A DNA stretch of 64,000 nt from Convolutriloba macropyga (taxonomy: Eukaryota), in assembly GCF_964194025.1 (NCBI RefSeq), contig NC_134476.1, forward strand, positions 28,954,001 to 29,018,000, read 5' to 3'. This document shows positions 28,101-54,699 of the stretch, piece after piece. The notes beneath the pieces were generated by a model that was not told the DNA's origin, searched no databases, and saw only the letters and a list, made by a program, of their open reading frames with translations. Both the position numbers and the translations under genes were made by a program. Each line of letters starts with the position of its first letter. Position 1 is the stretch's first letter.

Positions 28101-30738
28101 ATCCCAATCCTTTACGCGAGGCGTCACATTTAATTCGTGTTTCTAATTCCGGGTTGAAATGTTTATTTTCAGTGGTTTCCGTAATTTGTTCTTGTATTAA
28201 AGAAAATTGTTTATCGTGCTCTTCCGTCCAAAGAAATTTTGAATTTTTCTTAAGTAATGGTCGTAGGGGGTAACATAATTGTGACAAATTCGGGATAAAT
28301 TTTCCTAGATGGTGTACAGAACCCATAAAAGAGCGAAGTTTTTTAAGATTAGTGGGTGCCGATAATTTTCCAATTGCATCCGTTTTACTTGAAAGTGGGC
28401 TTACACCTGATTGTGTAATATTATGACCGAGCCATTCAATCGTTTTTTTCGCGAAATGACATTTTGCAAGATTTATGCGTAAGTTTTCTTGATCCAGTTT
28501 TATTAGACATTTTCGTACCAAGTCTAGATGTTTTTCGATTCCACCTCTGCTAACAATCAAAATATCATCTAAGAAACAGAAAGTATTTTCCAAATCGGCA
28601 AGAGTACAATCAATAGCTTTTTGGAATTCAGCTGGCATGTCCGTTAAACCGTAAAATCCAGTTTTAAATCGATATGTGCCGGTCATATCTCCACTAACAA
28701 TATTAAAGTTACAATGGCGGGCCGTATCACTGTGTAGCTTTAGTTGACTATAAGCGTTTTGCAAATCAAGAGTTGTGAAATAAGCGGTCTCCTGCGGCAC
28801 CGTTGACAGTGTTTGCAAAATTGTTTGAATTAGCGAATCTATATTGGGCATTTGATACTTGTTTTTATGAAAAGCTTTGTTTAAGATTTTTGAATCGAGT
28901 GCTGTTTTGATTTATTTGTCCTTTTTTACCGTAATGACAATCGGAGATATGAAAAATTGATCAGAACAGTTGTTTAATTTTTCGATATGTCCTTCATTCA
29001 ACAGTTTTTCTAATTCAATTTTCACTTTCGTTTGGAGGTGTATGGGCACTTTTCGTCCTTTTTGATGTATTACTCGATAATTTTTGTGAAATCTTGAATT
29101 GACCGTGTGATTTTTTGATTTTCCAATGCGGGATATCAAATCAGGAAACTCCTTTGCCAGTGATTTCTTTATTGCACAAGGTGGATCTATATTGTTAACT
29201 TCTGTTTGCGGACAAGGCTTCTGAGAAATTGTGATGCCTAACTGATCAAAAAGGTCTCGTCCTAATATTGGTCGAAACCCATCGGCTACAACTGTTATTT
29301 TTGCTTTCTGAATGCTCCAATCATTACATTTGACCGGCGTTTTCAAAGTGCCAACGGGTTGAACGATATCGTTAGAAAATGACTTCAATTCCAATGGTCT
29401 TTTCTCCGACCATTGTGATTGAGCACAATTGAGCATTATTTCTCTTGCAAGCGACATATTAATAATGGTACAACCACTACCGGAGTCGAGAAGTAAATCA
29501 CAGTTTGTGTTTGCGATTGTTAATGACAAATTTTTCAGTGCTAAATTTGGTGAACTCATATTTTCAACTGTTGCAACGTAATTATCATCCGAAGAATCAT
29601 AGTCTGAGTTGATTTGCTCATTATAATTGATATAATTGACGTTCTGATTTTCCTGACTAGAGTTTTGATTAGATGTTTCAACCGTTTCTACAGTGTTAAT
29701 GCGATTGGTTTGTTGAGTGTTTCTTGTATTATTAAGTCTTCGACGACATACCTTAGCGAAATGGTTTTGCAAACCACAGTGGTTACATTTCTTACCCATT
29801 GCGGGGCAAACCTGACGATGTGTAGGTGTCCAGATTTGACCACAACCACGACATTGTCCAACGGATGCACGGTTGGTGACTGCTCTGCTTGATTGAGTTC
29901 CACGTACACCCGCGCCGCGAAATCGATTTAATTGTTGTATTGCGTTCACCCTACTACCAGTTGCTCCGTTATTAGATGAAATTCTTTGCTGATTCTGATT
30001 ACCCATTACCATTTTGACTGCGATGCTGAGTGCCCTCTCTGGTTCAACTGTATCCCGTAGAAGCTCTCGCTGAATGTCATCATCCAGCATGTTAGTGATG
30101 AAAATGTCCCTGATGATGGCTTCTTCACGGTTTTCAAAGTCGCAATTTTCAGCCAATTCTTTCAAGATGCTGTAGAATTGCTCTACAGTTTCGCCCTTCT
30201 TTTGCTTCCGAGAGAAGAACACATAACGATCAAATGTGATGTTTCTTGGGCGGATAAAGGCAATCTCCATCATTTCCCAGAGTTTGAGGGTAGTCAAATC
30301 GTAAATATTGTCGTGCGGGAATTTTTGTGTTAGTAATCGTCTTCCTTCAGTACCAATACTTAGGTACAATAGAGATACGCATTTTTGATCACACAAATTC
30401 CATGGACGCTCCCCGCATAGTATTCCCGCTTCTGTTATCTTTTGACATTTTAGTTCCCATTGCAACTTCAACTGGTTGTTTCTTATTCTACGCTCTCTCT
30501 CTGCTTCCTCGGCTGTGTCGTCAATCGGCATCTCGTACTTCGGTTCCGCTGGCAGACGAACTGTCGATGGTTTGGGTTGTAGCAATGTGTCTATAGTGAT
30601 ATTCTCGCGAGCGAGAATCGCTAGTTTTAATTGAATTCTCCATTTCTCCCATCTGATTGGTGGGTCTGAAGTTGGTCGTTCCCAAATTGGCTCTACCGAC
30701 AACGGTGTTTTTCTCGATTCTCGAGCTGGCTGCGCCAT
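25105..30738 (-). pseudogene. Gypsy gag-pro-RT-RNaseH-integrase single ORF with one in-frame stop at 28912-28914
   Basis: ORFs 28912-30786 and 25105-28851 are in the same frame (KDK*IKTALDSK). Knuckles CRGC...CPAMGKKCNHCGLQNHFAKVC, protease LLDSGSG, RT LDLQNAYSQ/FLDD, RNase H CDAS..ELE..TDH, integrase H-H-C-C and D-D-E (IDFGG, RLDQ, GLVER), long basic C-tail. Confidence 0.95.
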
Positions 30739-31334
30739 GTCGTACAGATTTACAATCTGTAGGAATGAGTTGTTTCGTGGTACCAATTAGCTTTCTCTAC
30801 AGCGGCCAATTTAGGGGTGAATTGGCGGAGCGGTTTAATGCTTTTATTTGTTGCTTTAGAATTAACTATTTGAGTTACAGAATTTAAGTCAAATTGGCGG
30901 AGCGAAATCGCGTTCAATTATTTGTAGAGTATTTCGCTCAGCGAAAGATACCAAAATTTTGATGCGTCTGAATTTAGACTTTGGCGAATCAGATTCTAGT
31001 TAAGAGAGAGAGAGTCAACTAATTTGAATTACGAAATTGAGAAGAATGAAATTAGACAAAATTAACAAAACTGCTTAACAATTTGTTCATAAGGTAACAT
31101 TACTAAATGCGGCAACTTACAATCACGAGACAAGGTGAACAGACAAAAGATCATGCACAGGATGTAAACAAATTTACAAGTATGAAATCATAAGATTCGA
31201 TCTTCAAAATTAAAACTAAATGAATGAACAAATTAAAGGTAAATGAAATGAACTAAATTAAGTTAAACAGAAAATGAACCAAATTAGCTACACCAAATAA
31301 TAATCTCAAACTAAAAATGTACTATTGTGCCACA
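30738..31334 (-). repeat. 5' LTR of the Gypsy element
   Basis: Direct repeat of 24379-24973, followed on the minus strand by the PBS. Confidence 0.95.
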
Positions 31335-34548: not shown

Positions 34549-34992
34549 TAAAATGGGAACCAGCCGACAAATTAACCCCCCACGCACTTTGCAACAAAAT
34601 GGGAGGACTTTATGGAGGACATTCAACCCGGGTGGCAGCAAATTTCTCATTTTTCCCTTTTCGGCTAAACTCCCTGTCGGCCAATTTTTCTAACCCCTTG
34701 CTGGGCTGTTGTTTTTGCCTTGTATAGTCTTCTAAGGTAAATCTCCAATTTATCACATCTATACTGTGTTGATTTCTACATCGCCTTTTTTGATATACAT
34801 CCGTTTCGATGCATGTTCCGTTCTTTTTTGTACTTCCTCCTGGAGGCTAGCTTTAATTCAAAAAAGCTTGATCCTTGGAAGAATCAAGCTTTGTTTGGCT
34901 TTTCGTTGCTTATGTCGCAAGAAAAACTCTGCATTAGGAATAGTCGAATTCCTTGGGTGCTCGTGGGTTTTTCACTACTTCTAAAATACGTA

Positions 34993-35875
34993 AGTAATAT
35001 ATAGGTGAGCTACCCTCCCCGGGGGTGAGGTCCCCCATGTATTAAGATAGGGTATAGCGTAATTTCCAGGAGATAGGGGCCTCTCACATGTTATAAGATA
35101 GGGTATAGATTGCATGTAATAAGATTAGCCGGCTACATGTACTAAGATTAGTTATAGCCGCCGACATGTATTAAGATTAGTTTTAGCCGGCGACGTGTAT
35201 TAAGATTAGTTATAGCCGGCGAAATGTATTAGGATTAGGTATAGCCGCGGAGATGTATTAAGGTTAGTTATAGGTGCCACCATGTATTAAGATAGGGTAT
35301 AGATTTTGTGCATGTATTTGTGCACTCATATATGCTAGTAGTATAGTCGGTGCAAATGTGGGGGGGGGGGGGTAGGTTTGGAGACGCTCCTGATTGGCTG
35401 AAATTTTCAGGGGAAAATATCAATTTTTGTGTAGTTATTAAGTGTTTACTTGAGAACAATAGAATTGGCGAGGGTAATTAATTGCTGTAATTATCTAGGG
35501 GGTAATTATGTGACATTGTCAATTTTGGTTGTTAAGCTTTCGGTCAATTGCAAAGATTGTTCCCCTAATTGTTTGAATCAATTGTGTAACAGTTGTCTTT
35601 TGCGCGCTCATTAATTGGAAAAAGTTCAATGATAGCAAGAGGTAGTTTTGATCTACCGTCCTCTGGGTTATGGGCCCAGCGCGCTCCCACTGCGCCATCT
35701 TGCTAATTACATGCATATATGCATTTTTTTTGTACATTATTTGAAAAAAGATGTTAATTAACAGAAAAAAAATGAATTAAAATAGTATAAAATGACAGAC
35801 AAATTAAAAATTATGAGCATCAAAATACAAAATTACTCAATCATTTACAATAAATTGTATAAATTTCAATGAACA
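34993..35875 (+). repeat. Polinton left TIR, with 29-bp tandem repeats (CATGTATTAAGATTAGTTATAGCCGGCGA) and a tRNA gene
   Basis: Reverse complement of 52959-53947. Confidence 0.93.
35633..35704 (-). tRNA. Initiator tRNA-Met (CAT) inside the left TIR
   Basis: AGCAAGATGGCGCAGTGGGAGCGCGCTGGGCCCATAACCCAGAGGACGGTAGATCAAAACTACCTCTTGCTA. 72 nt, all four stems pair, A1:U72, three G:C pairs at the bottom of the anticodon stem, C33, A54/A60 T-loop, T5 terminator ~10 nt downstream. Confidence 0.92.
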
Positions 35876-35971
35876 AGAAAAAAACATGAATTAAAATAGT
35901 ATATAATTACAGACACAGTATAAATGCAATTGTGAATATTAAGGAACTGTGATATAGCAAAACTATTTGAG

Positions 35972-38900
35972 TTATATGTTGAGTGGTGCTGTGTGAATAC
36001 CGTCAGACTGAACAATGCTCTTAAGGTAGAAACAAGACAGTCCCTTCTTTGTCTGCTCATACGTAGCAACACAATGGTTTATTGTTCTGAACCCTCTATA
36101 TGTTGAAGTAAGATTGATATTTTCATCCATCAAACGTCGATATTTCTCCATTGTTCCATCTCCGTTTTCTTCTAGTGTTCTTTTGTTGAGACCTTTACTA
36201 CTGAACTTGTATTTGTCAGACTGTGAATCGTAGCAACAATAAGATTTGCTACAAAGTCAAATCTTTTCCGTTAATCTGAATTCTTCCTTGAAGAGCCCTG
36301 GTTCCCGTTTACCATGCTTCTTATACTTAGAGCAACACGTTCTAGGGAAGAAACCTTGAATAGCAACTGCTTGAAAAGAGTCATTACAGTCCTGCTGTCT
36401 GAATGCTTCCCATTCTTGTTTTTTAGCAAGTCGAATACAATCATACAAATTCTCATGAGCTAGGGCTAAGTAGAGAGAACCTGTATCCATCTCTAACTCC
36501 TCGAATTTATTGACATCGCAAAATCTGTCAAAGAAGCTATAGTAGAGCTCCAATATTCGTAGTTTAGCGTACTGAAGTATGAAGAATCCAACTATTATAG
36601 GTTCGCGGTGTTCAATTTTTGATTTTGCTAGTTTAACTTCGTCAAGCTCATTTGAGACATTGTTCAAACGCTTAAACATTTTTCCATTGATTGCTTTGTG
36701 CGTCTTCTCATCGTTCAAATATTTGATCTCTGTATGTTTGCTTCTGTCCATAATCTGATAACCGTAAGAGCTATTACCCAATAATTTCATGGTCTCAGCA
36801 ACAACGCTGGAATCAGTATTTTCATCTTCACCCCTTCTAGCGTCTACCACTGACTGTACAAAGGTGTTGAAACATTTTCTTGGCGTGTACTGTACAAATC
36901 TATAAATTCGTGTACATTTCAGACCGAGAATGATGTAGAAATTTAGTAGGGGAGTACTAATTGTTCCATTTTCCAGATTGAAATTTGAAATTAGCATTCG
37001 CTGAGGTTGCTTCAGTAAGTTGTTTTCAACAGCGTAATCTCTCATATAATCCCCAATATCAGCTCGACTAACGTTGAAATTTTTGAAAATAGGCGGGAAA
37101 TTCGAAAACTTGTACTTCAAGCCTGCGGGAACTTCCAAATCACATTGTACGTATCCAAATATCTCTCCATCTCTTATTTAGCTAGTCAAGACTCTTGCTT
37201 CAAAGGAAGTTTGAAAGGAAAGTTCTTTCTCACGTGATTTCTAACATTTTTTTCTTTAAAACTTTCCCACCATTTACATTCCCTGAATTCAACAATCTTA
37301 TATCCTTTACTTTTTAGGTAATCTCTTCTCAATTCATCATGTTCTCTTTTCCTAATCCCTCTCTGTGTTTCCTCTTCCGAGAGACTTGCTTTAGCTTCCT
37401 GACAAGGACAGAAATGAAAGTACCAACCCATGGCTTCAAACACCGTATTAAAATGTGCGCAAAATCCGTCTACGCTAAAACAATCAATCTCCTTCTGTTT
37501 TCCGGTTGTGTAGTAGCTCTCAATTTTACATTCCGGACGTTGTGATTGAAGTTATGACATAACCATGTTCTCAATTGTTCGAGATCTGTTTGTTCGAGCC
37601 CTGAATTTTTGAGAATCTGTATCAAGTTCCCATAGAGTGTAAAGTCCAGTGGGAATTTCTTGACACATTGAAAAGGGATAGAGTTGGCTAGCGTCAATAT
37701 GTCCGCTAGACTTGCAAAGGTTTTCAGTGTTTTGTATGAAGGCCTGATCAACTACTGCCTTTCTGGTGAAAACAATAGATGGACCAACAGTCATATCTTC
37801 ACGTATTTTGTCAAGTAAATCCTTGTCAGCTTCAACAAATGGTAAAAATTTGTGGTTTGTTGACATGTGAAGACAGATATTAGCCAAGTTCGGAAGTGTG
37901 CATCCGAGTTGTAACATATCGATACCCTTGTTGTAATAAAACTCCATCATTTTTTGCATTGCCTCCAATGTTGGAACAACATCTTTGTTGTTGTACCTCT
38001 TGACAAAATCTCTGAATGTAGCCATTTGTTCTTGATACCAGACCACTTTCAGGTAATTGTAATTGTCAATTCCAGATGGAGGAACAGTTTTCAACCTCAA
38101 CTTTTTTTTTAACTCTTGTTGAGAAAATCCACTGTTAAGCAATTTAGTGAAATCAGTAAATTCCTTCTCCAGTGGATTATAATTTCTCAGTTTGCTAAAG
38201 AAACTGTCGTAAGGAGGGAGAAAAGTTGCTTCGAGCTTTTCAGGAGAGTCAAACCACTCATAGGGGAAGAATTCTTTAGTCTCACTTGTCTTGTATGCTT
38301 TAGGGAAAAAATCAAGTGAGGTAACTCCACCGAGAAAATTGAGGATATCGAGAGATTGTACATCACCAAATTAAAGAGAAACAAAGTAATTTGCCTCCTT
38401 TTTAATAACAGTAGGTTGAAAGTCGCGCTCAGGAATAAGATAGGGCAGGAGATAGGACTTAATGAGATTTAAATCATATTTACCACTATTGAATCGGAAC
38501 ACAGTTAAAGTATTCACATAACGCTCAAAGTGTTGCTGTAAGTCCAAAAGCTGGTTTTTCTGCATTTGGAGAAATTGCGTAGACATATCAACTTCATCAT
38601 CTTCTTCGACACGTTCATCTTCACACTCAAATGCTGAAGCGTTTTGATCTTTTCTTTTACTTAATTTTTCCCAAATTGCGTTAACTCGTGCTCTGATTAT
38701 TGCTTCAATAGAGGAAAACTTTGTCCGCGTTTCAGTTTTACTTTTGTTTGCTAATTCTTCAATGGCTTCAACAAAAGATGTAATGAGAGCTTTCGGATCT
38801 TTATCGCATAGGAAGACAGGTTCATCAATTAAATTGGAGAAAATAGAAACAGAGAATGGTTCATGCTTTCCAATCCAAATGGTTGTGTTTGTATCTTTTA

Positions 38901-40326
38901 ATTGCTCGGAGGGTACACATATCGATTCAAAGTCAAAAGTAGCCAAGTTTTTGAACAATTTTTGATCATCGTTGTAAGAAATTCCAAATCCGTCAAGTTT
39001 ATCAAAAAAGGTCTCGCGCAATGTATACACACTCTTTGGGTAAACATGCTGTACTCTATCTTTACACGTTTTAACATGGCGGTTGAAATTTCCCGCTTTC
39101 TGAATGAACGTATCGCAACTTAGGCAACGGAATCGTTTAAAGAATGTGTTAATATCATCCACATAGCATATGTGGTTGTTGTAACGTAATAAATTAATAT
39201 TTTGCTCATACATTTCAACATTTCTCCTCGCAAATTCACCAACAAAACCTCCATCTACAATGTCATTATTGTAAATAAGTAAGTTGTGCTTTATCGCAAT
39301 TTCAACAAACACAAGATGATCGATCGATACCCCTCTGAAATTGATTGCGTCATGTCCAGATTCATGGAGGAATGCACTAAACAAATATTTTGCATTGGTC
39401 TCAAGCTCCTATGATCCATATAAGTGAACAGCTATAGCTCGGAATAAGCAAAGATAGTCTTTATAAGTCTCGCCTTAGCCATTCGATACAAGACAATTCA
39501 CATCTGATCGTCGAAGTAACTGTTCAGGAAGAACAGCGTCGATACATCCCATTGGAATGCTTTTTAGGAGAGCGCAGAATATTGTAGATTTGTAGTCAGA
39601 GCAAATCGCCATTTTGTATTCTCCCGCTCCTGAGCACAAGTCTCCACTAAATCCATCTTTTCAATCCTGTCCTGAAGAGAGACTAAGTCTCCTTTGGAAC
39701 AGAGTAAATGAGATTTCTCGAAGAAGGTGTTGTTCTCGTGAGCGTAGAAGTATCGATACTCGTCCGTATCCACATTTCTTAATTAAATCCTAGAGCCAAG
39801 TTGACTTTGGCAGCACAGTTGTATTTTGCGAATACTTCTTTCAACTTTTTATTAATTTCATGAGGATCGAGCTTGGACAGCTTGAAGTTGAACAGTTGAT
39901 GTCTCCCATTTTCCATCTCAGTATCGTCAAAAAAGTGCTGACAAGCACTAAGTTCTTGTTGCAGCTGCTCGTTGTCTTTTTCCATTTCCTCTGATTCTAG
40001 AACTTCGTTAAGTTTTCACTCGATTATGTCCCAACTTTTGTTGAAGTTCAATGCTTTCTCCTCCTGTGTTGTTGAAGAGAATAGAAACTCGGAAACTCCT
40101 CCAAGCATACAGTACACACAGTACTTATCTTTGTATCCTTAGGAGCGTGATGCTTAGCAATATGGTAATTCATGTCTTCTTTCTTCTTTGTACTTAAATG
40201 TGGACATTTGGGACAAAATAAAGTCGCATTATCACAAGACTGCTTGTGTCTTGCCATATTCTTCTTCACCACCATTTTGTTGCACTTAATGCATTTCACT
40301 GGGAGATTTCTATCGAAAGAAGGCAT
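35972..40326 (-). pseudogene. Protein-primed family B DNA polymerase with N-terminal C2H2/C2HC zinc fingers and a Vsr-like insertion; many frameshifts and stops
   Basis: ExoI FDFES, ExoII FNSGKYDL, ExoIII YNNKDV, motif A IDASQLYP, motif B KLLGNSSYGY, motif C MDT(G)S, KSY, SKG. Start MPSFDRN at 40326; C-terminus ...APLNI* at 35972. Confidence 0.93.
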
Positions 40327-41068
40327 TGTTTTGGTACAAGATGAAACAAATTCGGGTATTGTGACGAGCAACTATTTGTGAAAATAACAAAGTGAGAATG
40401 AAAGAAATTATTTTTGTACAATTAGGGAACGCAGCTATGACACATCACTCCATATATGGAAATTTATCATTTCCACTTTACGAAGCTTTTTGTCATAACC
40501 GAACATTCGAGAACATAATGAATAAAGCAATCAGATTCTTCCATTTTGAAATACCTTAAATTTTTATGAACATTCTTTTTAAATGAGTGAATTTATTCCT
40601 TGGCGTAAACTCAAAAATATCAAATCATTCTTATATCTTCTTCTTAATCATATCTGTTACATTTTAAATAAGTTTTCATATTTCATCCAGCCATAATCCA
40701 AAAACAGACTCACAACAAATTCAAACAAATTGTTCCAATCTTTACAAAATCTGAGATTCATATTTGTGTCTATCCACAATTGACAGAATTCGGTGCTTGC
40801 AAACAAATCTAGTCGTATTGAAAATTGAAATTAGCACATGAATATGCTTTTACGACAATATTAATTATGACGAAAACAAATATTCATCCATACTTCAGGA
40901 ACAAATTTTTACTGTACAACTTAACGGTATTGTCGTGGAACCCCTCAACCAATAAAAATCCCGTGTTAAAGAAACTATTCTGAAGATGAACGATTTTGTT
41001 TTGTGTAATTGTTTCTTGATTTTATTTTTCTTTTACATAAACAGAGTATTGCGTGAAATTTTGCTCAT

Positions 41069-41380
41069 TTGCGAAAAATGTTAATTAAAAATCATTTACA
41101 GTTGTTGGAAAAAATATATAAGAGGAAAGTAGGAATTGCCGATGCTTACAAAGTTGACGAGATTGATGTTGATTCCTACTTTTTCTACAATTTCTTGGAC
41201 ATTTCCGTTCAGAATAACAGAATATTCCGATTTAGTAAAGGATTTGAATCTGCAACATTTTCCATTAAAAAATTCAAATATGATGATTATATAACGAAAC
41301 AATCGTTTGATTTATCGTCAGAGCTACACATTAACAAGTACAAAATTTTATTTATTTTGAATTCTGTTACCGAAATTTAA
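41069..41380 (+). pseudogene. Polinton accessory ORF fragment, function unknown
   Basis: 103-aa ORF inside the element; no recognisable motif. Confidence 0.35.
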
Positions 41381-41555
41381 GAACAGTACAGACATCTAGC
41401 ACAAGCGAACTGTATTCCAATTCCTGACTCCATAGCAATCACTTCATCTGTACAAAGCGCGTTGTTTTTTCATTACTATACAGATTACAATTCTGAAGGG
41501 GTAAAAATTTGATTTGGAATTCGGCTCCCAAATATAAATATACAAAAGTTCTGTT

Positions 41556-41940
41556 CCAAATATGGAACACTTTCCGAGATTCATTTAAAATTTAACGAAT
41601 TTGAACAATTTTATCATAGCTTGACCTTTTTGGTAAATTATGTCAGTTCGTTCCCACTCAGCTATCCTTATTTAGTAAAAAAGTAGTCATATCATGTGTT
41701 ATATGTATTATTCGAAAACCATATTTGGCTTCTATTCACGCATTGATGTTCCTGTTTCGTATACGAGCGTCATTCTATAACAAATTCTTCCATATTTGGT
41801 TACGTTAAAAATTTACATTTGATGTTTTGGTTACTAACGTCACTTTTTCTACAAAATATTTCCTTCTTTGGTTACTTTGTTCTTATTGGAAGGAATTCAC
41901 TATAAATAGGAGCGATATAGTTAGACATTATCATTCTCTT
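41556..41940 (+). promoter_or_regulatory. Putative Pol II promoter: three CArG boxes, TATA/MEF2-like CTATAAATAG and Inr-like TCATTC
   Basis: CCAAATATGG at 41556, CCATATTTGG at 41719 and 41790, CTATAAATAG at 41900-41909, TCATTC at 41931 (30 bp after TATA), upstream of ORF 42095. Confidence 0.55.
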
Positions 41941-42094
41941 TCATTTCCTCAAAAATAATTTCACCTCTGTTCCTCATCGTCCTGCTAACTATTCATCAAA
42001 ACTTTATCCTACATTCACATTCTTCTTATCTACAGAGCTTACTTCAGTTTTAACGATTATCTGTTTCTAACTTCTATCAAATAATCTGAACAAA

Positions 42095-42817
42095 ATGGAG
42101 TTTAATGTGCAAAACAATAGTCTTCTGTACTCATTTTCCTTCACTGAGGAGACTGCTCGGATAAGTGTTAAAGACTTATCAAACGGATTATATGACTCTG
42201 TAATCAATTTACCCATCACTGTGTGGCATATTATTGAGCACCAGCGACAACAGTTCGACACCTATCATCAGGGTCAGGTTCCAATTACGGAGAATTAGCT
42301 CGGAACTCAAGCGATGGGACACGAAGTTGCTGTTATTAGTGGACACCACTATCCTCACGTTGCTGGGACAGAATTTTCGCTGAACTACGTCGCTGGCAAC
42401 ATTCAATACACTTTCGCTTGGGAAGAAGGGCAAATTCACAACTCTTGGTTCTCTAGCCCGGATGTAAATCAAGTTTTGAGTTCAGTGGAAGAGTCAGGGA
42501 ATTTGCTTCAAACTGTGTTTGGCTTTGATGGGAGTGAGCTAAGTGTTGATACTAGCACCTGTTCAGCGAATGATCAGCAGAAATTTGATCCGGCGCAGTA
42601 CTATGGTTCTACTGATATGTCGGCTACTCGTTCAATGACAACACCTTCCATAGAGGATGGAACAGCCCTCAATCCAATTTTGCTTACTGATGAAAATTCA
42701 ACAACTTCAATCAGCGTTCAACCAACTGATCCTCCAGTATTATTTGAACGTTCCAGACCTTTTGGGAATGAGTTTCAAAACTTGCCAGAGTATGTTGTGA
42801 GAACTCTATTTGAGTAG
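42095..42817 (+). pseudogene. Polinton accessory protein (acidic, Ser/Thr-rich C-half); two in-frame ORFs separated by one stop
   Basis: ORFs 42095-42298 and 42314-42817 share a frame. Confidence 0.5.
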
Positions 42818-42984
42818 ATTTGAGTTGGTAAAATTTTTCAGCTTCATTTGTAATCAATTTTAACGGAATAGTTGTATGTTGATTTATACATTTTCCTGGT
42901 GATGAATTTAAACAATCTTTATAATATAATCTTTCTTATGTGAGCTTTCTTTTCTAAACCAGTTCAAAAGGATATCATCAAATA

Positions 42985-43450: not shown

Positions 43451-43830
43451 ATTAGAGGTATCAATTTAAACATTCAAGAAAAAGATTGTAAAAATTGAGA
43501 AATTGAATTTTTTTGATTTTTAACTCAAAATATAAAACTGATACTATGTGAATCATTGTCATGCAATTACAAATCTTTTACTTTCTAGTTTCAAGATATA
43601 ACAGAGAGTTATCAATTAAGCCATGACCATCTAACAAACGGTCAACAATTTTTATCAGTTCACTCTCATATTTTGAGTTTTTAATAGATTGAATTCTGTC
43701 CAGAAAGGAAGATCCTATGGTTTGTGTGCTTACATTTCTTTGTTCGGCTCGCAGTAGATGTCTCTTGAACTTCTTTCTACTCAATCCCTTTTTTGGACAC
43801 ACTAGGTAACTTCTCAACAAAATTGTTTTA

Positions 43831-44175: not shown

Positions 44176-44197
44176 TCTGTAAAATTATTTAGTACGT

Positions 44198-44330: not shown

Positions 44331-44375
44331 AAACAAATGAAATTGTCTTGTGCAATTTAAAATCTCATTTGAACT

Positions 44376-46231: not shown

Positions 46232-46234
46232 TCA

Positions 46235-47102: not shown

Positions 47103-47329
47103 TTGTGTAATTTTGTATTTGATGATAATAATCAAGAACGACAATCATGGAAATGTTTTGGACAGATCTGTAGTAGGTCTCTAGTCATTTTTCTGTCCCA
47201 ATTTTTTGTTATACTGGTAATTCTGGCCTGTTGTATAGTACGAATAACATTGGCTAGAAGAAACAACAGTTTGGATTGCAATCTTTTCTAGTACAGTTGG
47301 TTATATTTTACCTTCACCTAAATTATGAA
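47103..47329 (+). pseudogene. Small two-TM Polinton membrane protein, frameshifted
   Basis: SRSLVIFLSQFFVILVILACCIV and, after the shift, VWIAIFSSTVGYILPSPKL*; its stop overlaps the ATPase ATG (ATGA). Confidence 0.55.
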
Positions 47330-48152
47330 CAAGATAATTTCCACAAAAGAACGAACTTTTATTTCATTGGTTGGTCAAAGCGGGTCTGGGAAATCTCATC
47401 TTATACATGAATGGTTAACATTTGGAACTTTTCAACCAGAGTTCGACAAAATTTACTACTTCTATCAACATTATCAATCTCTTTATGGTTTAATGTCTAA
47501 AAATGTTAAAAATATTGAGTTTAAAGAAGGAGTTGGCTTTGAGTTTATTCAAAACCTCCCGAATAACGGAACAAAGTATCTGTTAAAGTTTGACGACTCT
47601 TATGAGGAAATTTCCAGCTCTAAAGATTTTGTTAAAATTGCAACAGCTGGAAGACATAAAGGACTCAGCACAATATATATCAAACACAATTTATTTCATC
47701 GGAGTAGATTAAGAAGAGATATAGAGTTACAAAATACTCATATTGTCTTGTTCAAACCTCCTAGAGATGTACTGCAAATAAAAACTCTGAGTCAACAGTT
47801 GGGATTAGGTTCACAATTAAGAGATTGGCATACCAAAGCAAGTTCTATTCCTTATGGTTATTTACTTAATGATTTAACTCCCGAAACAGTCGACACTCTT
47901 CGATTTTGTACAAATAGTGGATCGATTCCTTCAATTTTTTTCCTTCCACAACATAACGGACAGCGGACCACATTTTTGAGTGATGAGCACACAACATCTC
48001 TCTACTCTGACAACGTTCCAAAGTTATTCCCGGAACTTCAAAAGAACTTACCTAAAAAAATTTCCAAAAGAGTTTTTTCAGTTTCTAAACGAGTGCCTCG
48101 TAACCTGCTCAGAGGAAAACTGCGAGATATTCAAAAACAAGATGTAATATAG
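47325..48152 (+). CDS. A32/FtsK-family genome packaging ATPase
   Basis: Walker A GQSGSGKS, Walker B LLKFDD, AGRH.G.STIYIKHNLF, QNTHIVLFK.PRD..Q. The 3' end runs into the next ORF by frameshift. Confidence 0.93.
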   Translation: MNKIISTKERTFISLVGQSGSGKSHLIHEWLTFGTFQPEFDKIYYFYQHYQSLYGLMSKNVKNIEFKEGVGFEFIQNLPNNGTKYLLKFDDSYEEISSSKDFVKIATAGRHKGLSTIYIKHNLFHRSRLRRDIELQNTHIVLFKPPRDVLQIKTLSQQLGLGSQLRDWHTKASSIPYGYLLNDLTPETVDTLRFCTNSGSIPSIFFLPQHNGQRTTFLSDEHTTSLYSDNVPKLFPELQKNLPKKISKRVFSVSKRVPRNLLRGKLRDIQKQDVI

Positions 48153-48284
48153 TATCAAGACGAAATTCATCAGCTTATTCTAACAAGAACTGGAATAAAT
48201 AAAAAGAGAGCGATTTTAAGTTCAAGGAAAGGAATAGAACTTATATCAATTTTAACTCCGTCTATCATTAACCGTCTTTCATGA
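48030..48284 (+). pseudogene. Small basic Polinton protein, disrupted
   Basis: FLNECL.NLLRGKL...KKRAILSSRKGIELISILTPSIINRLS* reconstructed across frames. Confidence 0.45.
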
Positions 48285-48285
48285 A

Positions 48286-48693
48286 ATGGAACAGTTTGTT
48301 TTGATTCCTCAGCAGCTTTACGAACAAAAATTCAAATTAAATGTGTACAAATTGGACAAGAGTGAGGGAAAAGTTAACTTCGTACCACAAAATTTAGATT
48401 CTCTTCACAAGGAAATCACCAATAACACTAAATCATTCAAAAACGACTCAGTTGTAGATCAAATACTGAAATTTCCTCGAATCAAGCTGTCCCTCAGTGA
48501 CTCCATTTTACTGGATGGAAGAGATACAAATGTAGCATTTACCGATTTTATTTACGCTTTGAAGAGAAAAAATATTGAATTTCTTGATATCTATTACACA
48601 ATACTTGATGCTACAGGGATAAGTCTGAACAAAATTATAAACAAGGCTGCCAAAAGCAAAGACAGAGGGAGTTGGATCCCTTTCAAAATCTGA
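48286..48693 (+). CDS. Polinton hypothetical protein directly upstream of the integrase
   Basis: Intact 135-aa ORF MEQFVLIP...GSWIPFKI, tightly packed between neighbours. Confidence 0.6.
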   Translation: MEQFVLIPQQLYEQKFKLNVYKLDKSEGKVNFVPQNLDSLHKEITNNTKSFKNDSVVDQILKFPRIKLSLSDSILLDGRDTNVAFTDFIYALKRKNIEFLDIYYTILDATGISLNKIINKAAKSKDRGSWIPFKI

Positions 48694-49578
48694 AAAAGCG
48701 AAACTTCAACGATTATACAAAGAAGAAAAAGCTGCATTTGGATCGGATAGAAATCTTCAGAAAGCGAGCGATCTTTAAAGAAGCAAGGTTATTTCATTTC
48801 TCCACGCTAAAATTTCCTATACAAAATATCGTCGAGCAAATCGACATTTTAGACGATTACCTGCATTTGCAAAGCGGATAAATGAAATAAGTGCCCTTGA
48901 TTTAGCTTTTATGGACAAATTGTCAGAGTTTAGTAGCGGATTGAAGTATTTATTAATCTGCGTTGATGTATTTTCTCGTTTTGTCCGTGTTCAACAATGA
49001 AATCAAAGAATTCTACAGATGCTCTAGCAGCTTTCAAAAAAAATCTACGAAAAAAAAAGTATGGGTCGATCAAGGAACAGAGTTTGGTGGCGAAATTAGG
49101 AAATTTAGTAGACAAAAGAAATTAAAAGTTATTCAACGAGAAGTGAAACAAAAGCTGCCGTAGCTGAGAGAGCTAACAGATCTTTGAAAAACATTATTTA
49201 TCGCTTCATGGAAGAAAACGGGTATAAGTACCTTTTAAAAATGAGCTCTTTCCTAAATACAATGAATGGTAGAGTAAATACATCTACAGGTAAAGCTCCA
49301 AAGGAGGTAAAAAACAAAGACTTTCTATCAATTTTTTTTTTTATAAAATCCGATCAGTCAATACAAAAAAACCTTGGTTTAAAGCAGGGGATAAAATACG
49401 GATTTCGAAATACGATATTCCTTTTAGAAAAGGATACAAGTCACAGTTCATGGGTGAAATTTTTGAAAATTTTAAGATTGCTACTCACAAACCTCCAACA
49501 TAGAACCTCAAGGGAGAGCAGGGTGATGAAATACTAGGAAAAATTTATGAACAAGAACTCTCAAAGTGTGTCATCTAG
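48672..49578 (+). pseudogene. Polinton retroviral-like (rve) integrase, frameshifted
   Basis: LDLAFMDKL, KYLLICVDVFSRF, VWVDQGTEFGG, KAAVAERANRSLKNIIYR, F.KGYK.QF..EIF.I, G..YEQEL. Confidence 0.9.
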
Positions 49579-49580: not shown

Positions 49581-50340
49581 ATGATTTCTTATACGGTAGA
49601 GCTGGTTTCCAACGCATCTTTTGATTGTTATCCAAATAATACATTGAGTTCTTTTACCAATTTCCTTCCAGAACTGATTAACCTTGAAGGAGAATGGGAG
49701 GTGGCAATAAACGGACTATCATATCCAACTTTGTACCAGAATATTACTGATGGAAATTTTTTATATCTAGATGCTGCAACTCCATATACAAAACCTTCCG
49801 ATTATTATACAATTGATGCAGAACTATATCCATCAATATCTGATGTTGTGAACGAAATGAACAAAAAAAATTCAGGAAAGAGAAAAGTATGAGAAAACTC
49901 CAATCAAATTAAGTCAACAGATTTACACAGAGAATCTCCTTAAGTCTTCCTAATGAAAACTCGTTACTAGTTACTTTCAGTACCGATCTCTTTCACGTAT
50001 TTGGTTGTGATGAAGCTGTTTACGGAATGGGAGTTAATATGAGTGGTCTTGGACCACATTTTCCTAAATTTCCTTACGATATTATTCGAATTCATACTCT
50101 CATGATATACAGTGATATTGTTGAATACAGTATTCTAGGTGATACAAAAGCCGCGCATTTGAGATGTATTGCGTTTATTTCTAAAATTTAAAATGGAGAC
50201 ATAATATCTACTGGACAATATATGAATTATCAAAACTTTCCAAATCTACATTTTAAAAAAATTCTGAAAAATTCTTTCCACAGCATTAAACTTGAGCTCA
50301 GCGACTCATACGTTGGAAAAGTTCCCTTCAAGTTTACGAA
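49581..50340 (+). pseudogene. Minor capsid (penton) protein, frameshifted
   Basis: VELVSNAS...YPNNTLSSFTNFLP..INLEGEWEVA; C-terminal MIYSDIVEY..LGDTKA..LR. Confidence 0.85.
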
Positions 50341-50344: not shown

Positions 50345-50700
50345 GGTTGCAGACAGTGATTTACCGTATTTTCGTGGTTATTCAAGATAAAGGGGAAGAG
50401 GATTTGGTGCTTTAGCACAAACAATTGGGAGGACTGCAATTCCATTTTTGAGACAATATGTTGTACCAGCAGCTAAAAGAGTTGGTGCTGACTTGATTGA
50501 ATTAGCTGCGCCAGAAATCGGAAAGGTATTAGCTGGAAGGAAAAGTTAAAATATGCTGCCACAGATGTTGGAAAGAAAACTTCAGTAAACAGCTAGGAGG
50601 ACGAAAACCTTAACGACGTTTTATTCGAAAACGCTCGACAAAAATCAGTCGAGGTCGGCGAACTAGGAGGGATATTTTTTTAATACTAAAGTGAATACCA
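50345..50700 (+). pseudogene. Putative virion core/membrane-active protein (YFRG...RGRGFG motif, Arg-rich tail)
   Basis: LPYFRGYSR*RGRGFGALAQTIGRTAIPFLRQYVVPAAKRVGADL...KQLGG...RGRRTRRDIF. Confidence 0.6.
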
Positions 50701-52013
50701 GATCAACAAATGATAGTAATTTCCGTTATGGACACTTTACCAATTCTTGCTTGGAGATTTTTGAAAAAATTCCGGTTTTGGAAACAATTGAATCCTCCCA
50801 TATTCAAGAAGTTTATCCCAGTAATTCATTGAATGAAAGCAGCATTGAATTTGAATTTGAAACTGATAGAATCATTTATCTTGATATGAGAGATATTCAT
50901 TTACAAATTAAAGTTGGATTGCAAAAGGGAAGATTATTTGTAGAGAAAAGAGAGAAGCATGGAAAAACAGATATCGGTATGACTTTCACTGATGATGATT
51001 TACAATATTTGACTCATGTCAGCAGTTTTTTACACTCTCTTTTCTCCATCTGCGAAGTGTGCTTAAACAATCAACAAGTGTACAACTTTAACGGACTCTA
51101 TGGTCACAAAGCTCTGATATCCAATGAATTCAATGCTTCTACAATGAAAAATGAAGGAATTGTGGCTTGTCATGGATACGAATTTGAGAAAGATCCTAGT
51201 GATCATGAAAAAAGCCCGTTAATAGACAGGGAAGAAGAGCTTTTGTTGAAAGATGGGGCCACCTTATATGGTAAACTTGCAATCGACTTATTTCGATGTG
51301 AAGAATTATTACTTCCAAATACAAAAATTAGAGTCAAATTGATTCGCGCGAGACAAAATTTTTACATGATTTCCTACAATCCTCATGTTTCCCTTAGAGT
51401 TCTCGACTGTTCACTTTTTACGAGACGTTTAGTCGTTAATGAAGTCTGTCAACAGACAATCAAGTATCAACTAACACATCAACCAGCTTGCTATATTTTA
51501 ATGGAGACAATTGCGCGAACATTTATTTCTCCTTCAGGACAAAACCAAATTAATCAGGAAAATTTTTTCAATAATGCTCCAATCAGGCGAATTGCAATAG
51601 CAATGAACACTAATTCAGCATTCACTGGACATTTTCAAGAAAATCCTTTTCATTATCAAAAGTTTGGACTGCGGGAGCTGAGAATTGTTCGAGGGGGGAG
51701 AGCTGTTGTCTCCATTGATACAACCAACAATTGTAGAGTTTATGTTAAAACAATGAAGGCAATGAACTTCAACGAAGAAATTCCTGCGTTACCCAATGAT
51801 TTTTTTACAGATCATTGTGTGCTTGTATTCAATCTCACCTCACTGCAAGATGCTGATAAAAATGTTCATTATCTTGAACTCAGTGGGGAAAGTCTTCGTT
51901 TAGAAATGTTCTTTGAACGTCCGCTAACCAATGTAACCGAGTTAATTGTTCTAGGAGGACGAATCTCAACAGTTATAATTGATCAGTTTGGAACAGTTGC
52001 AAAAAATGTCTGA
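50691..52013 (+). CDS. Double jelly-roll major capsid protein
   Basis: 440 aa; LEIF...VLETIE...EVYP, IEFEF...YLD, LHSLFS..V.LN, DLF..E.LLP.., N.AF.G....NPF.YQ.F, VFNLTS, G.LRLE..F..PL. Confidence 0.9.
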   Translation: MNTRSTNDSNFRYGHFTNSCLEIFEKIPVLETIESSHIQEVYPSNSLNESSIEFEFETDRIIYLDMRDIHLQIKVGLQKGRLFVEKREKHGKTDIGMTFTDDDLQYLTHVSSFLHSLFSICEVCLNNQQVYNFNGLYGHKALISNEFNASTMKNEGIVACHGYEFEKDPSDHEKSPLIDREEELLLKDGATLYGKLAIDLFRCEELLLPNTKIRVKLIRARQNFYMISYNPHVSLRVLDCSLFTRRLVVNEVCQQTIKYQLTHQPACYILMETIARTFISPSGQNQINQENFFNNAPIRRIAIAMNTNSAFTGHFQENPFHYQKFGLRELRIVRGGRAVVSIDTTNNCRVYVKTMKAMNFNEEIPALPNDFFTDHCVLVFNLTSLQDADKNVHYLELSGESLRLEMFFERPLTNVTELIVLGGRISTVIIDQFGTVAKNV

Positions 52014-52424: not shown

Positions 52425-52824
52425 CATTGATAATAAATCTCTTCAACAAATTAAAGAACGTTTTCCTGAGCTAAAAGTCAAATACATTGTATTGTTTCCG
52501 GCAGATTTCATTCCAAATTTACCCAAATTCAGCTTTGCAATCATTAACACTGCTTCGAGTAAAGAAGTCGGTGAACATTGGATATTGATTGCTCGACTCA
52601 ACAGAAATTACTATTATGCGGATTCTCTTGCTCGATCAGTAACACATATCGAATTTTTAGGTAAAAAGTACCAAAAAATAAAACATCGACCACTTCAGAA
52701 GATGCAAAATTTGTGTGGATTCTACGCAATTTTTGCAGCATTTCAACTATTTAAAATTTTCCAAACCAACTTGAATAGTATTCATGATGTGCACGTGTTA
52801 ATTTTTATAAGAAACTATATGTAG
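52425..52824 (+). pseudogene. Adenain-like cysteine maturation protease; 5' end damaged
   Basis: FPAD..P, IINT....GEHW, YYADSL, PLQ...NLCGFYAI (His-Asp-Gln-Cys order). Confidence 0.9.
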
Positions 52825-52958: not shown

Positions 52959-53947
52959 TGTTCATTGAAATTTATACAGTTTTTTGTAAATGATTGAGTA
53001 ATTTTGTATTTTGTTGCTCATAATTTATTCTGTGTCTGTCATTTTATACTATTTTAAATCATTTTTTTTCCTTTATATAACATGTTTTTTCAAATAATGT
53101 ACCGAAGAAATTCATATATGCATGTAATTAGCAAGATGGCGCATTGAGAGCGCGCTGGGCCCATAACCCAGAGGACGGTAGATCAAAACTACCTCTTGCT
53201 ATCATTGAACTTTTTCCAATTAATGAGCGCGCAAAAGACAACTGTTACACAATTGATTCAAACAATTAGGGGAACAATCTTTGCAATTGACCGAAAGCTT
53301 AACAACCAAAATTCAACATGTCACATAAATACACTCAGATAATTAGGGTAATTGAAAACCCACGCCAATTAACTTCACAGTTTAATATGACCTAAAATTT
53401 GTAAACAAAAATTCAACATGTCACATAATTACCCCTCAGATAATTACAGCAATTAAATACCCACACCAATTCTATTGTTCTCAAGTAAACTTTTAATAAC
53501 TACACAAAAATTGATATTTTCCCCTCGAAATTTAAGCCAATCAGGGGTGTCTCCGAACCTACCCCCCACATTTGCACCGACAATACTACTAGCATATGTG
53601 CATGCACAAATACATGCACAAAACCTATACCCTATCCTAATACATGGCGGCAACTACAACTAACCTTAATACATCTCCGCGGCTATAACTAATCTTAATA
53701 CATGTCGCCGGCTATAACTAATCTTAATACATGTCGCCGGCTATAACTAATCTTAATACATGACGGCGGCTATAACTAATCTTAATACATGTCGCCGACT
53801 AATCTTATTACATGCAATCTATACCCTATCTTAATACATGTGAGAGGCCCCTATCTCCTGGAAATTACACTATACCTTATCTTAATACATGTGGACCTCA
53901 ACCCCCCCCCCCCCCCCCGGGGGAGGGTAGCTCACGTATATACTAAT
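52959..53947 (-). repeat. Polinton right TIR, including an extra ~100-bp internal duplication near 53310-53410
   Basis: Reverse complement of 34993-35875; AAAATTCAACATGTCACATAA occurs twice here. Confidence 0.93.
53130..53201 (+). tRNA. Initiator tRNA-Met (CAT) inside the right TIR, two D-loop substitutions
   Basis: Identical to the left copy except D-loop ATTGAGA versus AGTGGGA; TTTTT at 53211-53215. Confidence 0.85.
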
Positions 53948-54699
53948 TACGTAACTGCTTTTCGATGTTCATTTGTGTTCACTTGCTGAGTGAAGTTGAA
54001 TTAACGTCTCATATATGAAACAGCAAAGAAGTCTATCTGAAGTTGTAGATAGACGGAATTACCGAGGGATGAAAGCTAGATAGAGTTTTGAAAACAAAGT
54101 TTCACAATTCGTTGAGCTATTGGCTCTTTCATGAAGAAGAATAGGTAACAGTAGATTAGGTGAGGATCGGAAATAATGGGGACGCCACAGAGCTTGAATG
54201 TACAGGAGTTATCGTCGCTTTGAAGAAAACTGTCAGGGTTAGCACACTCCGTTGGAGTAGAAAAGGGCGAATGGGCGTCGTTCCCTAACCCCGCACATTT
54301 GTACCGGAGAAAATCTGTATTGAACAGATATTATAATAATGCCATCTATATGAGGTTCAACACCATTTTTTGAAAAACAGCTCAGCTATAGGCGTCAAGT
54401 GCCGTTCAACCAGATCATCAGAATCCTGAGAAAAATTCATGCCATACATTGTCGCGGGCAAAATTACGGAGCATGGTAGGCGATAGGTGGACTTGAAAGA
54501 TATTGAGAATAAATTGACTTTGTTCCTAAGGTAGTATATATCATTTCTCGCTATTGATTTGCCGTGTTTAAAAGGTTTTTATGGTGACAATTTGGCGAAG
54601 AAGAAGAAGATCGAATAAACCATCAAATCACACTGACAAAATGTCGAAATTATTTCCAGATTTAAAAAAACATTAAATTTGGTTGGTCAAGAGTTTTTT

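What the first reader, a model, noticed from the sequence alone, without database searches (positions are those of the whole stretch)
35633..35704. Polinton/Maverick carries an initiator tRNA-Met gene in each terminal inverted repeat
Seen: a 72-nt tRNA at 35633-35704 (-) and its mirror at 53130-53201 (+), 640-750 bp inside each terminus, both pointing outward, each followed by a T5 run. Established: A1:U72, three G:C pairs in the anticodon stem, C33 and A54/A60 mark eukaryotic initiator tRNA. The acceptor stem (AGCAAGA/TCTTGCT) and T stem (GGTAG/CTACC) differ from the common animal iMet (AGCAGAG/CTCTGCT; GATGG/CCATC) yet pair perfectly, so the changes are compensatory. Inference: this is an element-encoded Pol III gene. 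It could supply Met-tRNAi when eIF2 ternary complex is limiting (compare the Pol III VA RNAs of the related adenoviruses) or act as a TFIIIC barrier at both provirus ends. I do not know of tRNA-iMet as a standard Polinton TIR component.
Basis: partly seen in the sequence, partly recalled or inferred. Interest (0 to 1): 0.92.

Follow-up and report, generated by a model that had tools for sequence, protein, structure and literature searches.

The report
Initiator tRNA gene carried by Maverick
A dead, 19-kb virus-like transposon (Maverick/Polinton) in an acoel worm genome carries a complete initiator methionine tRNA gene near each end; relatives show it is a small captured cassette found in one branch of the family, usually at one end only, so it is real and unusual but not a standard part of these elements.

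Summary
Rfam finds two 72-nt tRNAs at 35633-35704 (-) and 53130-53201 (+), each pointing outward and each followed by a T5 run. They carry the eukaryotic initiator signatures. The right copy has two D-loop substitutions.

The host element is a decayed Polinton/Maverick at 34993-53947, with a 6-bp target duplication. The host is an acoel worm.

Relatives change the interpretation:
- Eleven close relatives carry the identical tRNA, at the right end.
- The three left ends I could fetch from that group lack a roughly 131-bp cassette (59 bp plus the tRNA).
- The window's left arm shows the footprint of right-arm sequence copied across.
- A sister lineage has a diverged initiator tRNA about 60 bp away, in the opposite orientation.
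- More distant relatives with complete ends have none.
- No copies occur in about 190 kb of host flank, so it is not a SINE head.

Integrated copies decay like their flanks. Between lineages the tRNA is more conserved than its neighbours, with no pair-breaking changes.

Most likely this is a captured Pol III gene supplying initiator tRNA to the active element. A neutral passenger remains plausible. Function is untested.

The parts
35633..35704 (-). Left initiator-type tRNA-Met gene. It is identical to the founder sequence of the type A relatives.
   Evidence: Rfam 60.3 bits. ARAGORN tRNA-Met CAT. Own model R1 103.8 bits. Identical to 9 of the 11 type A right-end copies.
53130..53201 (+). Right initiator-type tRNA-Met gene, with two D-loop substitutions. 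One removes a conserved G of the D loop.
   Evidence: Rfam 55.6 bits. Not called by ARAGORN. Alignment.
35619..35623 (-). T5 run nine bases after the left tRNA (Pol III terminator-like).
   Evidence: Read from the sequence. The same T run is present in left arms of relatives that lack the tRNA, so it predates the cassette.
53211..53215 (+). T5 run nine bases after the right tRNA.
   Evidence: Read from the sequence.
53073..53201 (+). Right-arm tRNA cassette, about 130 bp: a 9-mer, about 50 bp of 5' flank, and the tRNA. This block is what is missing from the left arms of relatives.
   Evidence: Comparison of right ends (L001) with left ends (L028, L030, L031). Bounds are approximate at the 5' side.
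35633..35875 (-). Left-arm segment copied from the right arm: 171 bp of right-arm-specific sequence plus the tRNA. It sits next to a duplicated 'anchor' at 35875-35925.
   Evidence: blastn of the window's left arm against left and right ends of relatives. Inverted-repeat pairs I1 and I12.
34993..35875 (.). Left terminal inverted repeat.
   Evidence: Inverted-repeat pairs I1-I3 and I14, 86-94% complementary. Terminus set by the TSD.
52959..53947 (.). Right terminal inverted repeat.
34987..34992 (.). Left copy of the 6-bp target-site duplication TACGTA.
   Evidence: Read from the sequence. A relative whose two ends were both fetched (L009/L028) also has a 6-bp duplication.
53948..53953 (.). Right copy of the 6-bp target-site duplication TACGTA.
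35126..35293 (.). Left subterminal array of 29-bp tandem repeats (5.8 copies), with the core ATCTTAATACAT on the other strand.
   Evidence: TRF. The core motif is kept at the ends of relatives down to 52% capsid-protein identity.
53634..53801 (.). Right subterminal array of 29-bp tandem repeats (5.8 copies).
   Evidence: TRF.
35975..40275 (-). Protein-primed family B DNA polymerase gene with an N-terminal C2H2 zinc-finger part. Broken: about 11 in-frame stops and at least 2 frameshifts.
   Evidence: tblastn of ORFs from relative L030. PF03175 is precomputed on homologues P0196 and P0225. zf-C2H2 hits.
47325..48199 (+). A32-like packaging ATPase gene. Broken: at least 1 frameshift.
   Evidence: Pox_A32 at 22.7 bits on the intact relative, against a cut-off of 22.8. 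Weak on the window ORF. Break count.
48647..49575 (+). Retroviral-type (rve) integrase gene. Broken: at least 1 frameshift and several stops. The raw count of 14 stops is probably inflated by a low-identity alignment piece.
   Evidence: PF00665 at E 4.3e-12 on intact relative L012. Break count.
49581..50329 (+). 270-aa gene of unknown family, in the position expected for a minor capsid protein. Broken: 2 stops and at least 1 frameshift.
   Evidence: No Pfam hit. The role is inferred from gene order only.
50691..52013 (+). 440-aa ORF, unbroken. Probable double jelly-roll major capsid protein.
   Evidence: 705 homologues. The AlphaFold model is poor (pLDDT 47.7), but its Foldseek matches are mostly major capsid proteins of giant viruses, virophages, adomaviruses and adintoviruses, at TM 0.2-0.33.
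52426..52824 (+). Adenain-like cysteine protease gene, with no stop or frameshift across the 132 aligned codons.
   Evidence: Peptidase_C5 at E 0.0013 and 18.9 bits on the intact relative, below the cut-off..

Best explanation
What it is (shown). A cassette of about 131 bp, made of 59 bp of 5' flank plus a complete initiator-type tRNA-Met gene, sits at the inner edge of the right terminal inverted repeat in one clade of a Maverick/Polinton family of acoel worms. It lies just upstream of a T run that was already there. The cassette travelled with the element during amplification. In the lineage that produced the window's copy, right-arm sequence including the cassette was copied into the left arm, which lengthened the inverted repeat. 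That is why this copy has two mirror-image genes. The window's element later died: most of its genes are broken, one tRNA is pristine and one is damaged.

How it works (inferred). In an active element the gene is transcribed by RNA polymerase III from its internal promoter and ended at the T run. It adds Met-tRNAi to the cell's pool while the element's genes are being expressed. This is the role usually assigned to tRNA genes of giant viruses, phages and polinton-like viruses.

My confidence in the anatomy and history is about 0.85. My confidence in the functional step (a useful gene product rather than a passenger) is about 0.4. The figure given is for the whole statement.
For: Real tRNA with initiator signatures:
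- Rfam scores and alignments and own model.
- 99.3% of pair cells form standard pairs.
- The signature residues match those listed in PMC3950347.

Element-borne:
- All 11 close (type A) right ends carry it at the same place.
- None was found in about 190 kb of host flank, within the 526,585 bases searched.

A cassette at one end:
- The left ends L028, L030 and L031 lack exactly this block.
- L028 and L009 are the two ends of one element, with a matching 6-bp duplication.

Copying from right to left in the window.

A second arrangement. Type B (L002, L007) has a diverged initiator tRNA on the other side of the same conserved motif, inverted, with unrelated flanks. This means either a second capture of the same tRNA species or retention through a rearrangement.

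Constraint:
- The type A and type B founder sequences differ at 7 of 72 positions. None breaks a pair (P about 0.009).
- That is 9.7% divergence against about 26% in the adjacent DNA (Fisher p about 0.0015).
- The window lineage and type A share no difference in the tRNA, against 39 of 709 positions in the TIR flanks (P about 0.02-0.04).

Parallel: giant-virus contigs keep a near-identical initiator tRNA (66 of 72) in their tRNA arrays.
Against: - There are no expression, processing or charging data.
- After integration the tRNA decays like its flanks. Diversity among young copies is 0.0076, against 0.005-0.012 in the flanks. Private hits fall on the anticodon, conserved D-loop bases and a D-stem pair.
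- The conservation tests are weak. With flanks of only 150 bp on each side, Fisher p is 0.14. The A-versus-B test assumes common descent within the element; if the two were captured separately, the constraint acted in the host.
- More distant relatives do without the gene.
- Type B has discriminator G and U33, which may lower its use as an initiator.
- Extra initiator tRNA is not known to relieve eIF2-based shut-off.
- The host's own initiator tRNA genes could not be examined.
Confidence: 0.45

Rival explanations
1. Neutral passenger. A fragment of host DNA holding an initiator tRNA gene was patched into the right arm of one master element. It hitch-hiked through the burst and was duplicated by arm-to-arm copying. 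It does nothing for the element.
For: - The cassette is small, lineage-restricted and missing from one arm in most relatives.
- It is absent from more distant relatives.
- Integrated copies decay at the flank rate.
- The conservation signal is weak when only near flanks are used.
Against: - Two different arrangements of the same tRNA species lie within about 60 bp in sister lineages.
- None of the 7 founder differences breaks a pair.
- There is no shared change in the tRNA along the lineage leading to the window, while flanks changed by 5.5%.
Confidence: 0.3
2. Cis-acting DNA element. The tRNA gene recruits TFIIIC and Pol III and acts as a chromatin boundary or nucleosome-free anchor at the edge of the inverted repeat. 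This shields the element's genes (or its ends) from silencing. The RNA product itself would be irrelevant.
For: - Its position at the inner edge of the inverted repeat is kept in both arrangements, and orientation does not matter.
- tRNA genes are established boundary elements in yeast and mammals (general knowledge, not tested here).
Against: - Most relatives have it at one end only, so it cannot bracket the provirus.
- The whole cloverleaf and the initiator signatures are kept, not just the promoter boxes.
- Nothing here tests chromatin.
Confidence: 0.12
3. RNA-processing signal. In type A the tRNA lies downstream of, and on the same strand as, the capsid-protease gene block. RNase P and RNase Z cleavage of a read-through transcript would then shape the 3' end of late messages.
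For: Same-strand position about 300 bp after the last gene in type A.
Against: Type B has it on the opposite strand. The window's left copy is antisense to the polymerase gene next to it. There are no transcript data.
Confidence: 0.05
4. Nested small transposon or SINE head. The tRNA would be the promoter end of a tRNA-derived repeat that happened to land in the inverted repeat.
For: The cassette is flanked by an imperfect 9-bp direct repeat (6 of 9 identical).
Against: - There are no other copies in 526,585 bases, including about 190 kb of host flank.
- The tRNA is complete and canonical, and it sits at the 3' end of the cassette, not the 5' end.
- There is no body or tail.
Confidence: 0.03

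Closest known systems
tRNA genes of giant viruses (Nucleocytoviricota tRNA arrays)
   Same: These viruses also carry an initiator-type tRNA-Met. In 11 giant-virus-type contigs it is 66 of 72 identical to the Maverick copy, with identical acceptor and T arms.
   Different: There it is one gene in an array of 5-7 tRNAs in a large viral genome. Here it is a single gene in the inverted repeat of a 19-kb integrating element of an animal.
tRNA genes reported in polinton-like viruses and virophages of protists (PMC12220804) and in some MELD viruses (PMC8502044, Figure 6 legend)
   Same: Small virus-like elements of the same broad realm that carry single tRNA genes. Those authors also propose a translational role.
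   Different: The reported cases are elongator tRNAs (His, Leu, Arg) in protist elements or in non-Polinton replicase groups. I found no paper linking a Polinton/Maverick to an initiator tRNA.
Canonical Polinton/Maverick elements
   Same: Protein-primed polymerase, rve integrase, A32-like ATPase, adenain-like protease, capsid-like gene, long inverted repeats, 6-bp target duplication and a size of about 19 kb.
   Different: A tRNA gene is not part of the described core. Within this family it is present only in one clade.
Pol III genes of animal DNA viruses (adenovirus VA RNAs; tRNA-like TMER genes of murid gammaherpesvirus 68) - recalled from knowledge, not retrieved by any tool
   Same: Virus-borne Pol III genes with internal promoters, placed near a genome end.
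   Different: VA RNAs are not tRNAs, and Rfam found no such match. TMERs are tRNA-like, are not charged, and are fused to microRNA hairpins. Here the T run follows nine bases after a canonical tRNA, which leaves no room for a hairpin.

Membership tests
Eukaryotic cytoplasmic initiator tRNA-Met | tRNA cloverleaf above the Rfam gathering score, with anticodon CAU | tested here: met
   60.3 and 55.6 bits against a gathering score of 29. ARAGORN calls Met CAT for the left copy. 99.3% of pair cells are standard pairs.
Eukaryotic cytoplasmic initiator tRNA-Met | Signature residues: A1:U72, C3:G70, three G:C pairs closing the anticodon stem, A54 and A60 (listed in PMC3950347) | tested here: met
   Read from the Rfam alignment and from alignment A4. 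Type B keeps them too, but has U33 and discriminator G.
Eukaryotic cytoplasmic initiator tRNA-Met | Transcribed, processed, charged with methionine and used by eIF2 | not testable with these tools
   No expression or biochemical data are available here.
Eukaryotic cytoplasmic initiator tRNA-Met | Same sequence as, or derived from, the host's own initiator tRNA genes | not tested
   No host initiator tRNA gene outside a Maverick was present in the 526,585 bases available. The acoel assemblies cannot be searched by DNA with these tools.
Polinton/Maverick | Protein-primed family B DNA polymerase | tested here: met
   Homologues 65-67% identical to the window ORF carry PF03175. The window ORFs themselves give no Pfam or PDB sequence hit.
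Polinton/Maverick | Retroviral-type (rve) integrase | tested here: met
   PF00665 at E 4.3e-12 on intact relative L012. The window copy is broken.
Polinton/Maverick | A32/FtsK-like packaging ATPase and adenain-like protease | tested here: inconclusive
   Pox_A32 scores 22.7 bits against a cut-off of 22.8. Peptidase_C5 scores 18.9 bits against 21.3.
Polinton/Maverick | Double jelly-roll major capsid protein | tested here: inconclusive
   The model has pLDDT 47.7. Foldseek matches are mostly capsid proteins, but TM is only 0.2-0.33. The profile search of PDB sequences gave nothing meaningful.
Polinton/Maverick | Long terminal inverted repeats, 6-bp target-site duplication, size 15-20 kb | tested here: met
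   Arms of about 880-990 bp, 86-94% complementary. TACGTA duplication in the window. TCTGTC for L009/L028. Element length 18,955 bp.
tRNA-derived SINE | Many dispersed copies, with a tRNA-related head followed by an unrelated body and a tail | tested here: not met
   Only the 15 Maverick-end copies were found in 526,585 bases. The tRNA is complete and is followed at once by the T run.
Virus-encoded tRNA genes | tRNA gene inside the element's bounds and inherited with it | tested here: met
   Inside the TSD-bounded element. Found at the same site in all 11 type A right ends fetched.
Virus-encoded tRNA genes | Kept under selection in the element lineage | tested here: inconclusive
   The between-lineage tests favour constraint. 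They are weak, or they depend on common descent of types A and B. There is no constraint within integrated copies.
tDNA chromatin boundary | TFIIIC/Pol III occupancy and a chromatin discontinuity at the site | not testable with these tools
   No chromatin data are available.

The most novel reading that the evidence does not exclude
One clade of animal Mavericks has been selected, possibly twice independently (types A and B), to carry its own initiator tRNA gene. This would converge on giant viruses that keep a near-identical gene, and would imply that the supply or integrity of initiator tRNA limits replication of DNA viruses in eukaryotic cells.
Probability: 0.25. Interest if true: 0.65.

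Novelty: new member of a known kind. Interest (0 to 1): 0.45.

Why it matters
Virus-borne tRNA genes are well known in phages, giant viruses and protist polinton-like viruses. I found no report of one in an animal Maverick, nor of an initiator tRNA in any Polinton.

If the gene is active, three things follow:
- Mavericks could add to the host's count of initiator tRNA genes.
- There would be a natural marker (the cassette-specific variants) for following expression of these elements with ordinary tRNA sequencing.
- It would be a second, independent case beside giant viruses in which a eukaryotic DNA virus keeps this particular tRNA.

The arm-to-arm copying seen in the window is also a clear example of how the inverted repeats of these elements grow.

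If the gene is a passenger, it is an ordinary cargo capture.

Tried and rejected
- Sequence searches of PDB with two polymerase ORFs of the window gave nothing usable. The polymerase identity rests on Pfam hits precomputed for homologues.
- The AlphaFold model of the 440-aa protein was poor. Its fold matches are a hint only. A profile search of PDB sequences gave only chance-level hits.
- A search of IMG/VR for relatives of the capsid-like protein found none. The IMG/VR and JGI metagenome pattern scans found the tRNA only in giant-virus-type tRNA arrays. Neither collection gave any Maverick or cellular context.
- The 66%-identity relatives in Tara Oceans and other marine metagenomes sit on contigs that stop just after the protease gene, so they say nothing about the ends.
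- The sample accessions appear in no paper. The tRNA names I searched for (tRNA-Met, -His, -Leu, -Ile) do not occur in the two supplementary files held as text for the polinton-like-virus paper.
The reference would have had to come from memory.
- Rejected: SINE head; a TMER-like tRNA-microRNA unit (the T run is too close); a target-site relic (the gene lies 640-746 bp inside the termini).

Full report
**Observation**

Rfam finds exactly two matches in the window, both to the tRNA family. One is at 35633-35704 on the minus strand (60.3 bits, E 1.5e-10). The other is at 53130-53201 on the plus strand (55.6 bits, E 2.8e-09). The gathering score is 29. ARAGORN calls only the left one, as tRNA-Met with anticodon CAT. 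The two copies differ at two D-loop positions, both changed in the right copy.

Read from the alignment, the gene has A1:U72, C3:G70, three G:C pairs at the bottom of the anticodon stem, C33, A54, A60 and discriminator A. These are the signature residues of eukaryotic initiator tRNA as listed in PMC3950347.

**The element**

The inverted repeats are about 880-990 bp long and 86-94% complementary. In the window this gives bounds of 34993-53947 (18,955 bp), flanked by a 6-bp duplication, TACGTA. A relative whose two ends were both fetched (L009 and L028, one contig) has a matching 6-bp duplication, TCTGTC.

Evidence for the gene content comes mainly from intact relatives:
- rve integrase: PF00665, E 4.3e-12.
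- A32-like ATPase: 22.7 bits, at the cut-off of 22.8.
- Adenain-like protease: 18.9 bits, below the cut-off of 21.3.
- Protein-primed polymerase: homologues of the window's polymerase ORF carry PF03175.
- Capsid: the 440-aa ORF gave a poor model (pLDDT 47.7). Its fold matches are nevertheless mostly double jelly-roll capsid proteins.

This is a Polinton/Maverick.

The host is an acoel worm. An intronless ORF at 57961-59535 is 90% identical to a dynein regulatory complex subunit 3-like protein of Symsagittifera roscoffensis. Base composition fits published acoel genomes, and Mavericks make up 4.5% of the Praesagittifera naikaiensis genome.

**State of this copy**

The copy is dead. I measured it against ORFs of relatives:
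- The polymerase has about 11 in-frame stops and at least 2 frameshifts.
- The integrase has at least 1 frameshift and several stops.
- The ATPase has at least 1 frameshift.
- Most small genes have one to three stops, a frameshift, or both.
- The capsid-like gene and the protease are unbroken.

**What relatives show**

The capsid-like protein has 705 homologues, all from ENA assemblies. I fetched the DNA around a sample of them.

- Type A right ends. All 11 right ends of the closest group (about 90% protein identity, one assembly) carry the tRNA at the same place and in the same outward orientation. Nine are letter-identical to the window's left copy. One has a changed anticodon. One has two substitutions.
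- Type A left ends. The three left ends fetched from the same group lack the tRNA (L028, L030, L031). Two of them belong to the same elements as fetched right ends. What is missing is one block of about 131 bp: a 9-mer, about 50 bp, and the 72-nt gene. Its outer edge falls exactly at the end of the tRNA. The T run that follows the gene is present in these 'empty' arms, so it predates the cassette.
- Type B. A sister group (82-83% identity; L002, L007) has an initiator-type tRNA on the opposite strand, on the other side of the same short conserved motif, abutting the tandem repeats. Its flanks are unrelated to those of type A.
- More distant relatives with complete ends have no tRNA and no remnant of one. 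These are L005 (63% identity), L006 (52%), L029 and L032.

**Why the window has two copies**

The window's left arm reads, from the inside outward, as follows. First comes sequence specific to left ends, including a 45-bp 'anchor' that both arms share. Then comes 171 bp that in relatives occurs only at the right end, including a second anchor. Then come the tRNA and the common repeat (pairs I1 and I12).

This is the footprint of right-arm sequence copied into the left arm, which lengthened the inverted repeat. The opposite reading, loss from the left arm in relatives, would need an extra deletion with exactly placed edges. I therefore take the one-ended state as the older one.

**Not a SINE and not special stems**

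A covariance model built from the copies found only the 15 known ones in 526,585 bases, which include about 190 kb of host flank.

Pattern scans of IMG/VR and of JGI metagenomes found the same T arm and acceptor strand in 11 contigs. All are in tRNA arrays of the giant-virus type. Two are named giant-virus bins, and the others share their gene order. That tRNA is 66 of 72 identical to the Maverick one. Its acceptor and T stems are identical, and it has one compensatory pair change in the anticodon stem.

**Selection**

Among the young integrated copies, nucleotide diversity in the tRNA is 0.0076. This equals that of the flanks, at 0.005-0.012. Private changes hit the anticodon, conserved D-loop bases and a D-stem pair. 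Integrated copies therefore decay neutrally.

Between lineages the picture differs:
- The window's two arms share no difference from type A within the tRNA, against 39 of 709 positions in the rest of the repeat (P about 0.02-0.04). With only the near flanks the test is not significant.
- The type A and type B founders differ at 7 of 72 positions, none of which breaks a pair (P about 0.009). Adjacent DNA is about 26% diverged (Fisher p about 0.0015).
- If A and B descend from one capture, this is constraint within the element. If they were captured separately, the same tRNA species was taken twice within about 60 bp, which is itself unlikely by chance.

Either way a non-neutral role is somewhat favoured, but the evidence is modest.

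**Mechanism**

The anatomy and history described above are shown. The function is inferred.

My preferred reading is a Pol III gene that supplies initiator tRNA while the element is expressed, as proposed for other virus-borne tRNAs (PMC12220804). The alternatives are:
- a neutral passenger;
- a cis-acting TFIIIC/Pol III chromatin element;
- a processing signal for late transcripts.

The last fits type A only.

**Known or new**

tRNA genes are reported in polinton-like viruses and virophages and in some mid-size linear DNA viruses. I found no paper that links a Polinton or Maverick to an initiator tRNA. I file it as a new member of a known kind, virus-borne tRNA genes, with moderate interest. 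It is real, element-borne and oddly specific. It is also lineage-restricted, usually single, untested for function, and dead in this window.

I stopped there and used none of those letters in any call, script, note or conclusion.

Noticed in passing
window 35126-35293 and 53634-53801; also L001, L002, L005, L006, L007, L028-L032: The subterminal 29-bp tandem repeats have a 12-base core (ATCTTAATACAT) that is kept at the ends of family members down to 52% capsid-protein identity. Copy number ranges from about 3 to more than 24. They are candidate binding sites for the element's integrase or terminal protein.
   Followed up: partly
window 35875-35925 with 53023-53073: The left arm holds two copies of a 45-bp 'anchor' segment. 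This is the footprint of right-arm sequence copied into the left arm, which lengthened the inverted repeat.
   Followed up: yes
L001:12400-12545 against L028:11160-11190: The tRNA cassette is flanked by an imperfect 9-bp direct repeat (6 of 9 identical). This might be an old duplication made at insertion. How the cassette got in is unexplained.
   Followed up: partly
L003, L004, L033-L041: Eleven environmental contigs of giant-virus type carry an identical initiator-type tRNA-Met inside arrays in the order Leu-Gln-Lys-Met-Glu-Asn. That tRNA is 66 of 72 identical to the Maverick gene.
   Followed up: partly
L018-L027: A 464-aa relative of the capsid-like protein (66% identity) occurs with exactly the same sequence on contigs from at least ten marine metagenome samples, including Tara Oceans samples. 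The neighbouring genes are intact. This points to either a widespread host or a circulating virus-like form. The contigs stop before the ends.
   Followed up: partly
window 25105-30786 (-): Two long ORFs (1248 and 624 aa) of a Gypsy-type LTR retrotransposon, with reverse transcriptase, RNase H and integrase domains.
   Followed up: partly
window 57961-59535 (+): An intronless 524-aa ORF for a dynein regulatory complex subunit 3-like protein. It is 100% identical to an ENA protein and 90% identical to one from Symsagittifera roscoffensis. Being intronless, it may be a retrocopy.
   Followed up: partly
window 91-1293 (+): A 400-aa ORF encoding the C-terminal kinase and FATC domains of a PI3K-related kinase. 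This is a host gene exon at the edge of the window.
   Followed up: no
window 35360-35373 and 53900-53919; also L030:11795-11815: Homopolymer G/C tracts of variable length lie close to the termini of many copies.
   Followed up: no
L017 and L030 (one element on contig ctg36049_55x_l): The six bases flanking the two ends of this element do not match (GAATCC against AAAAAG), unlike the L009/L028 pair. This may reflect recombination between copies or a flank deletion.
   Followed up: no
L030:6577-10014: In relatives the polymerase ORF starts with a C2H2 zinc-finger segment. In the window the same segment is a separate short ORF (40048-40371).
   Followed up: no
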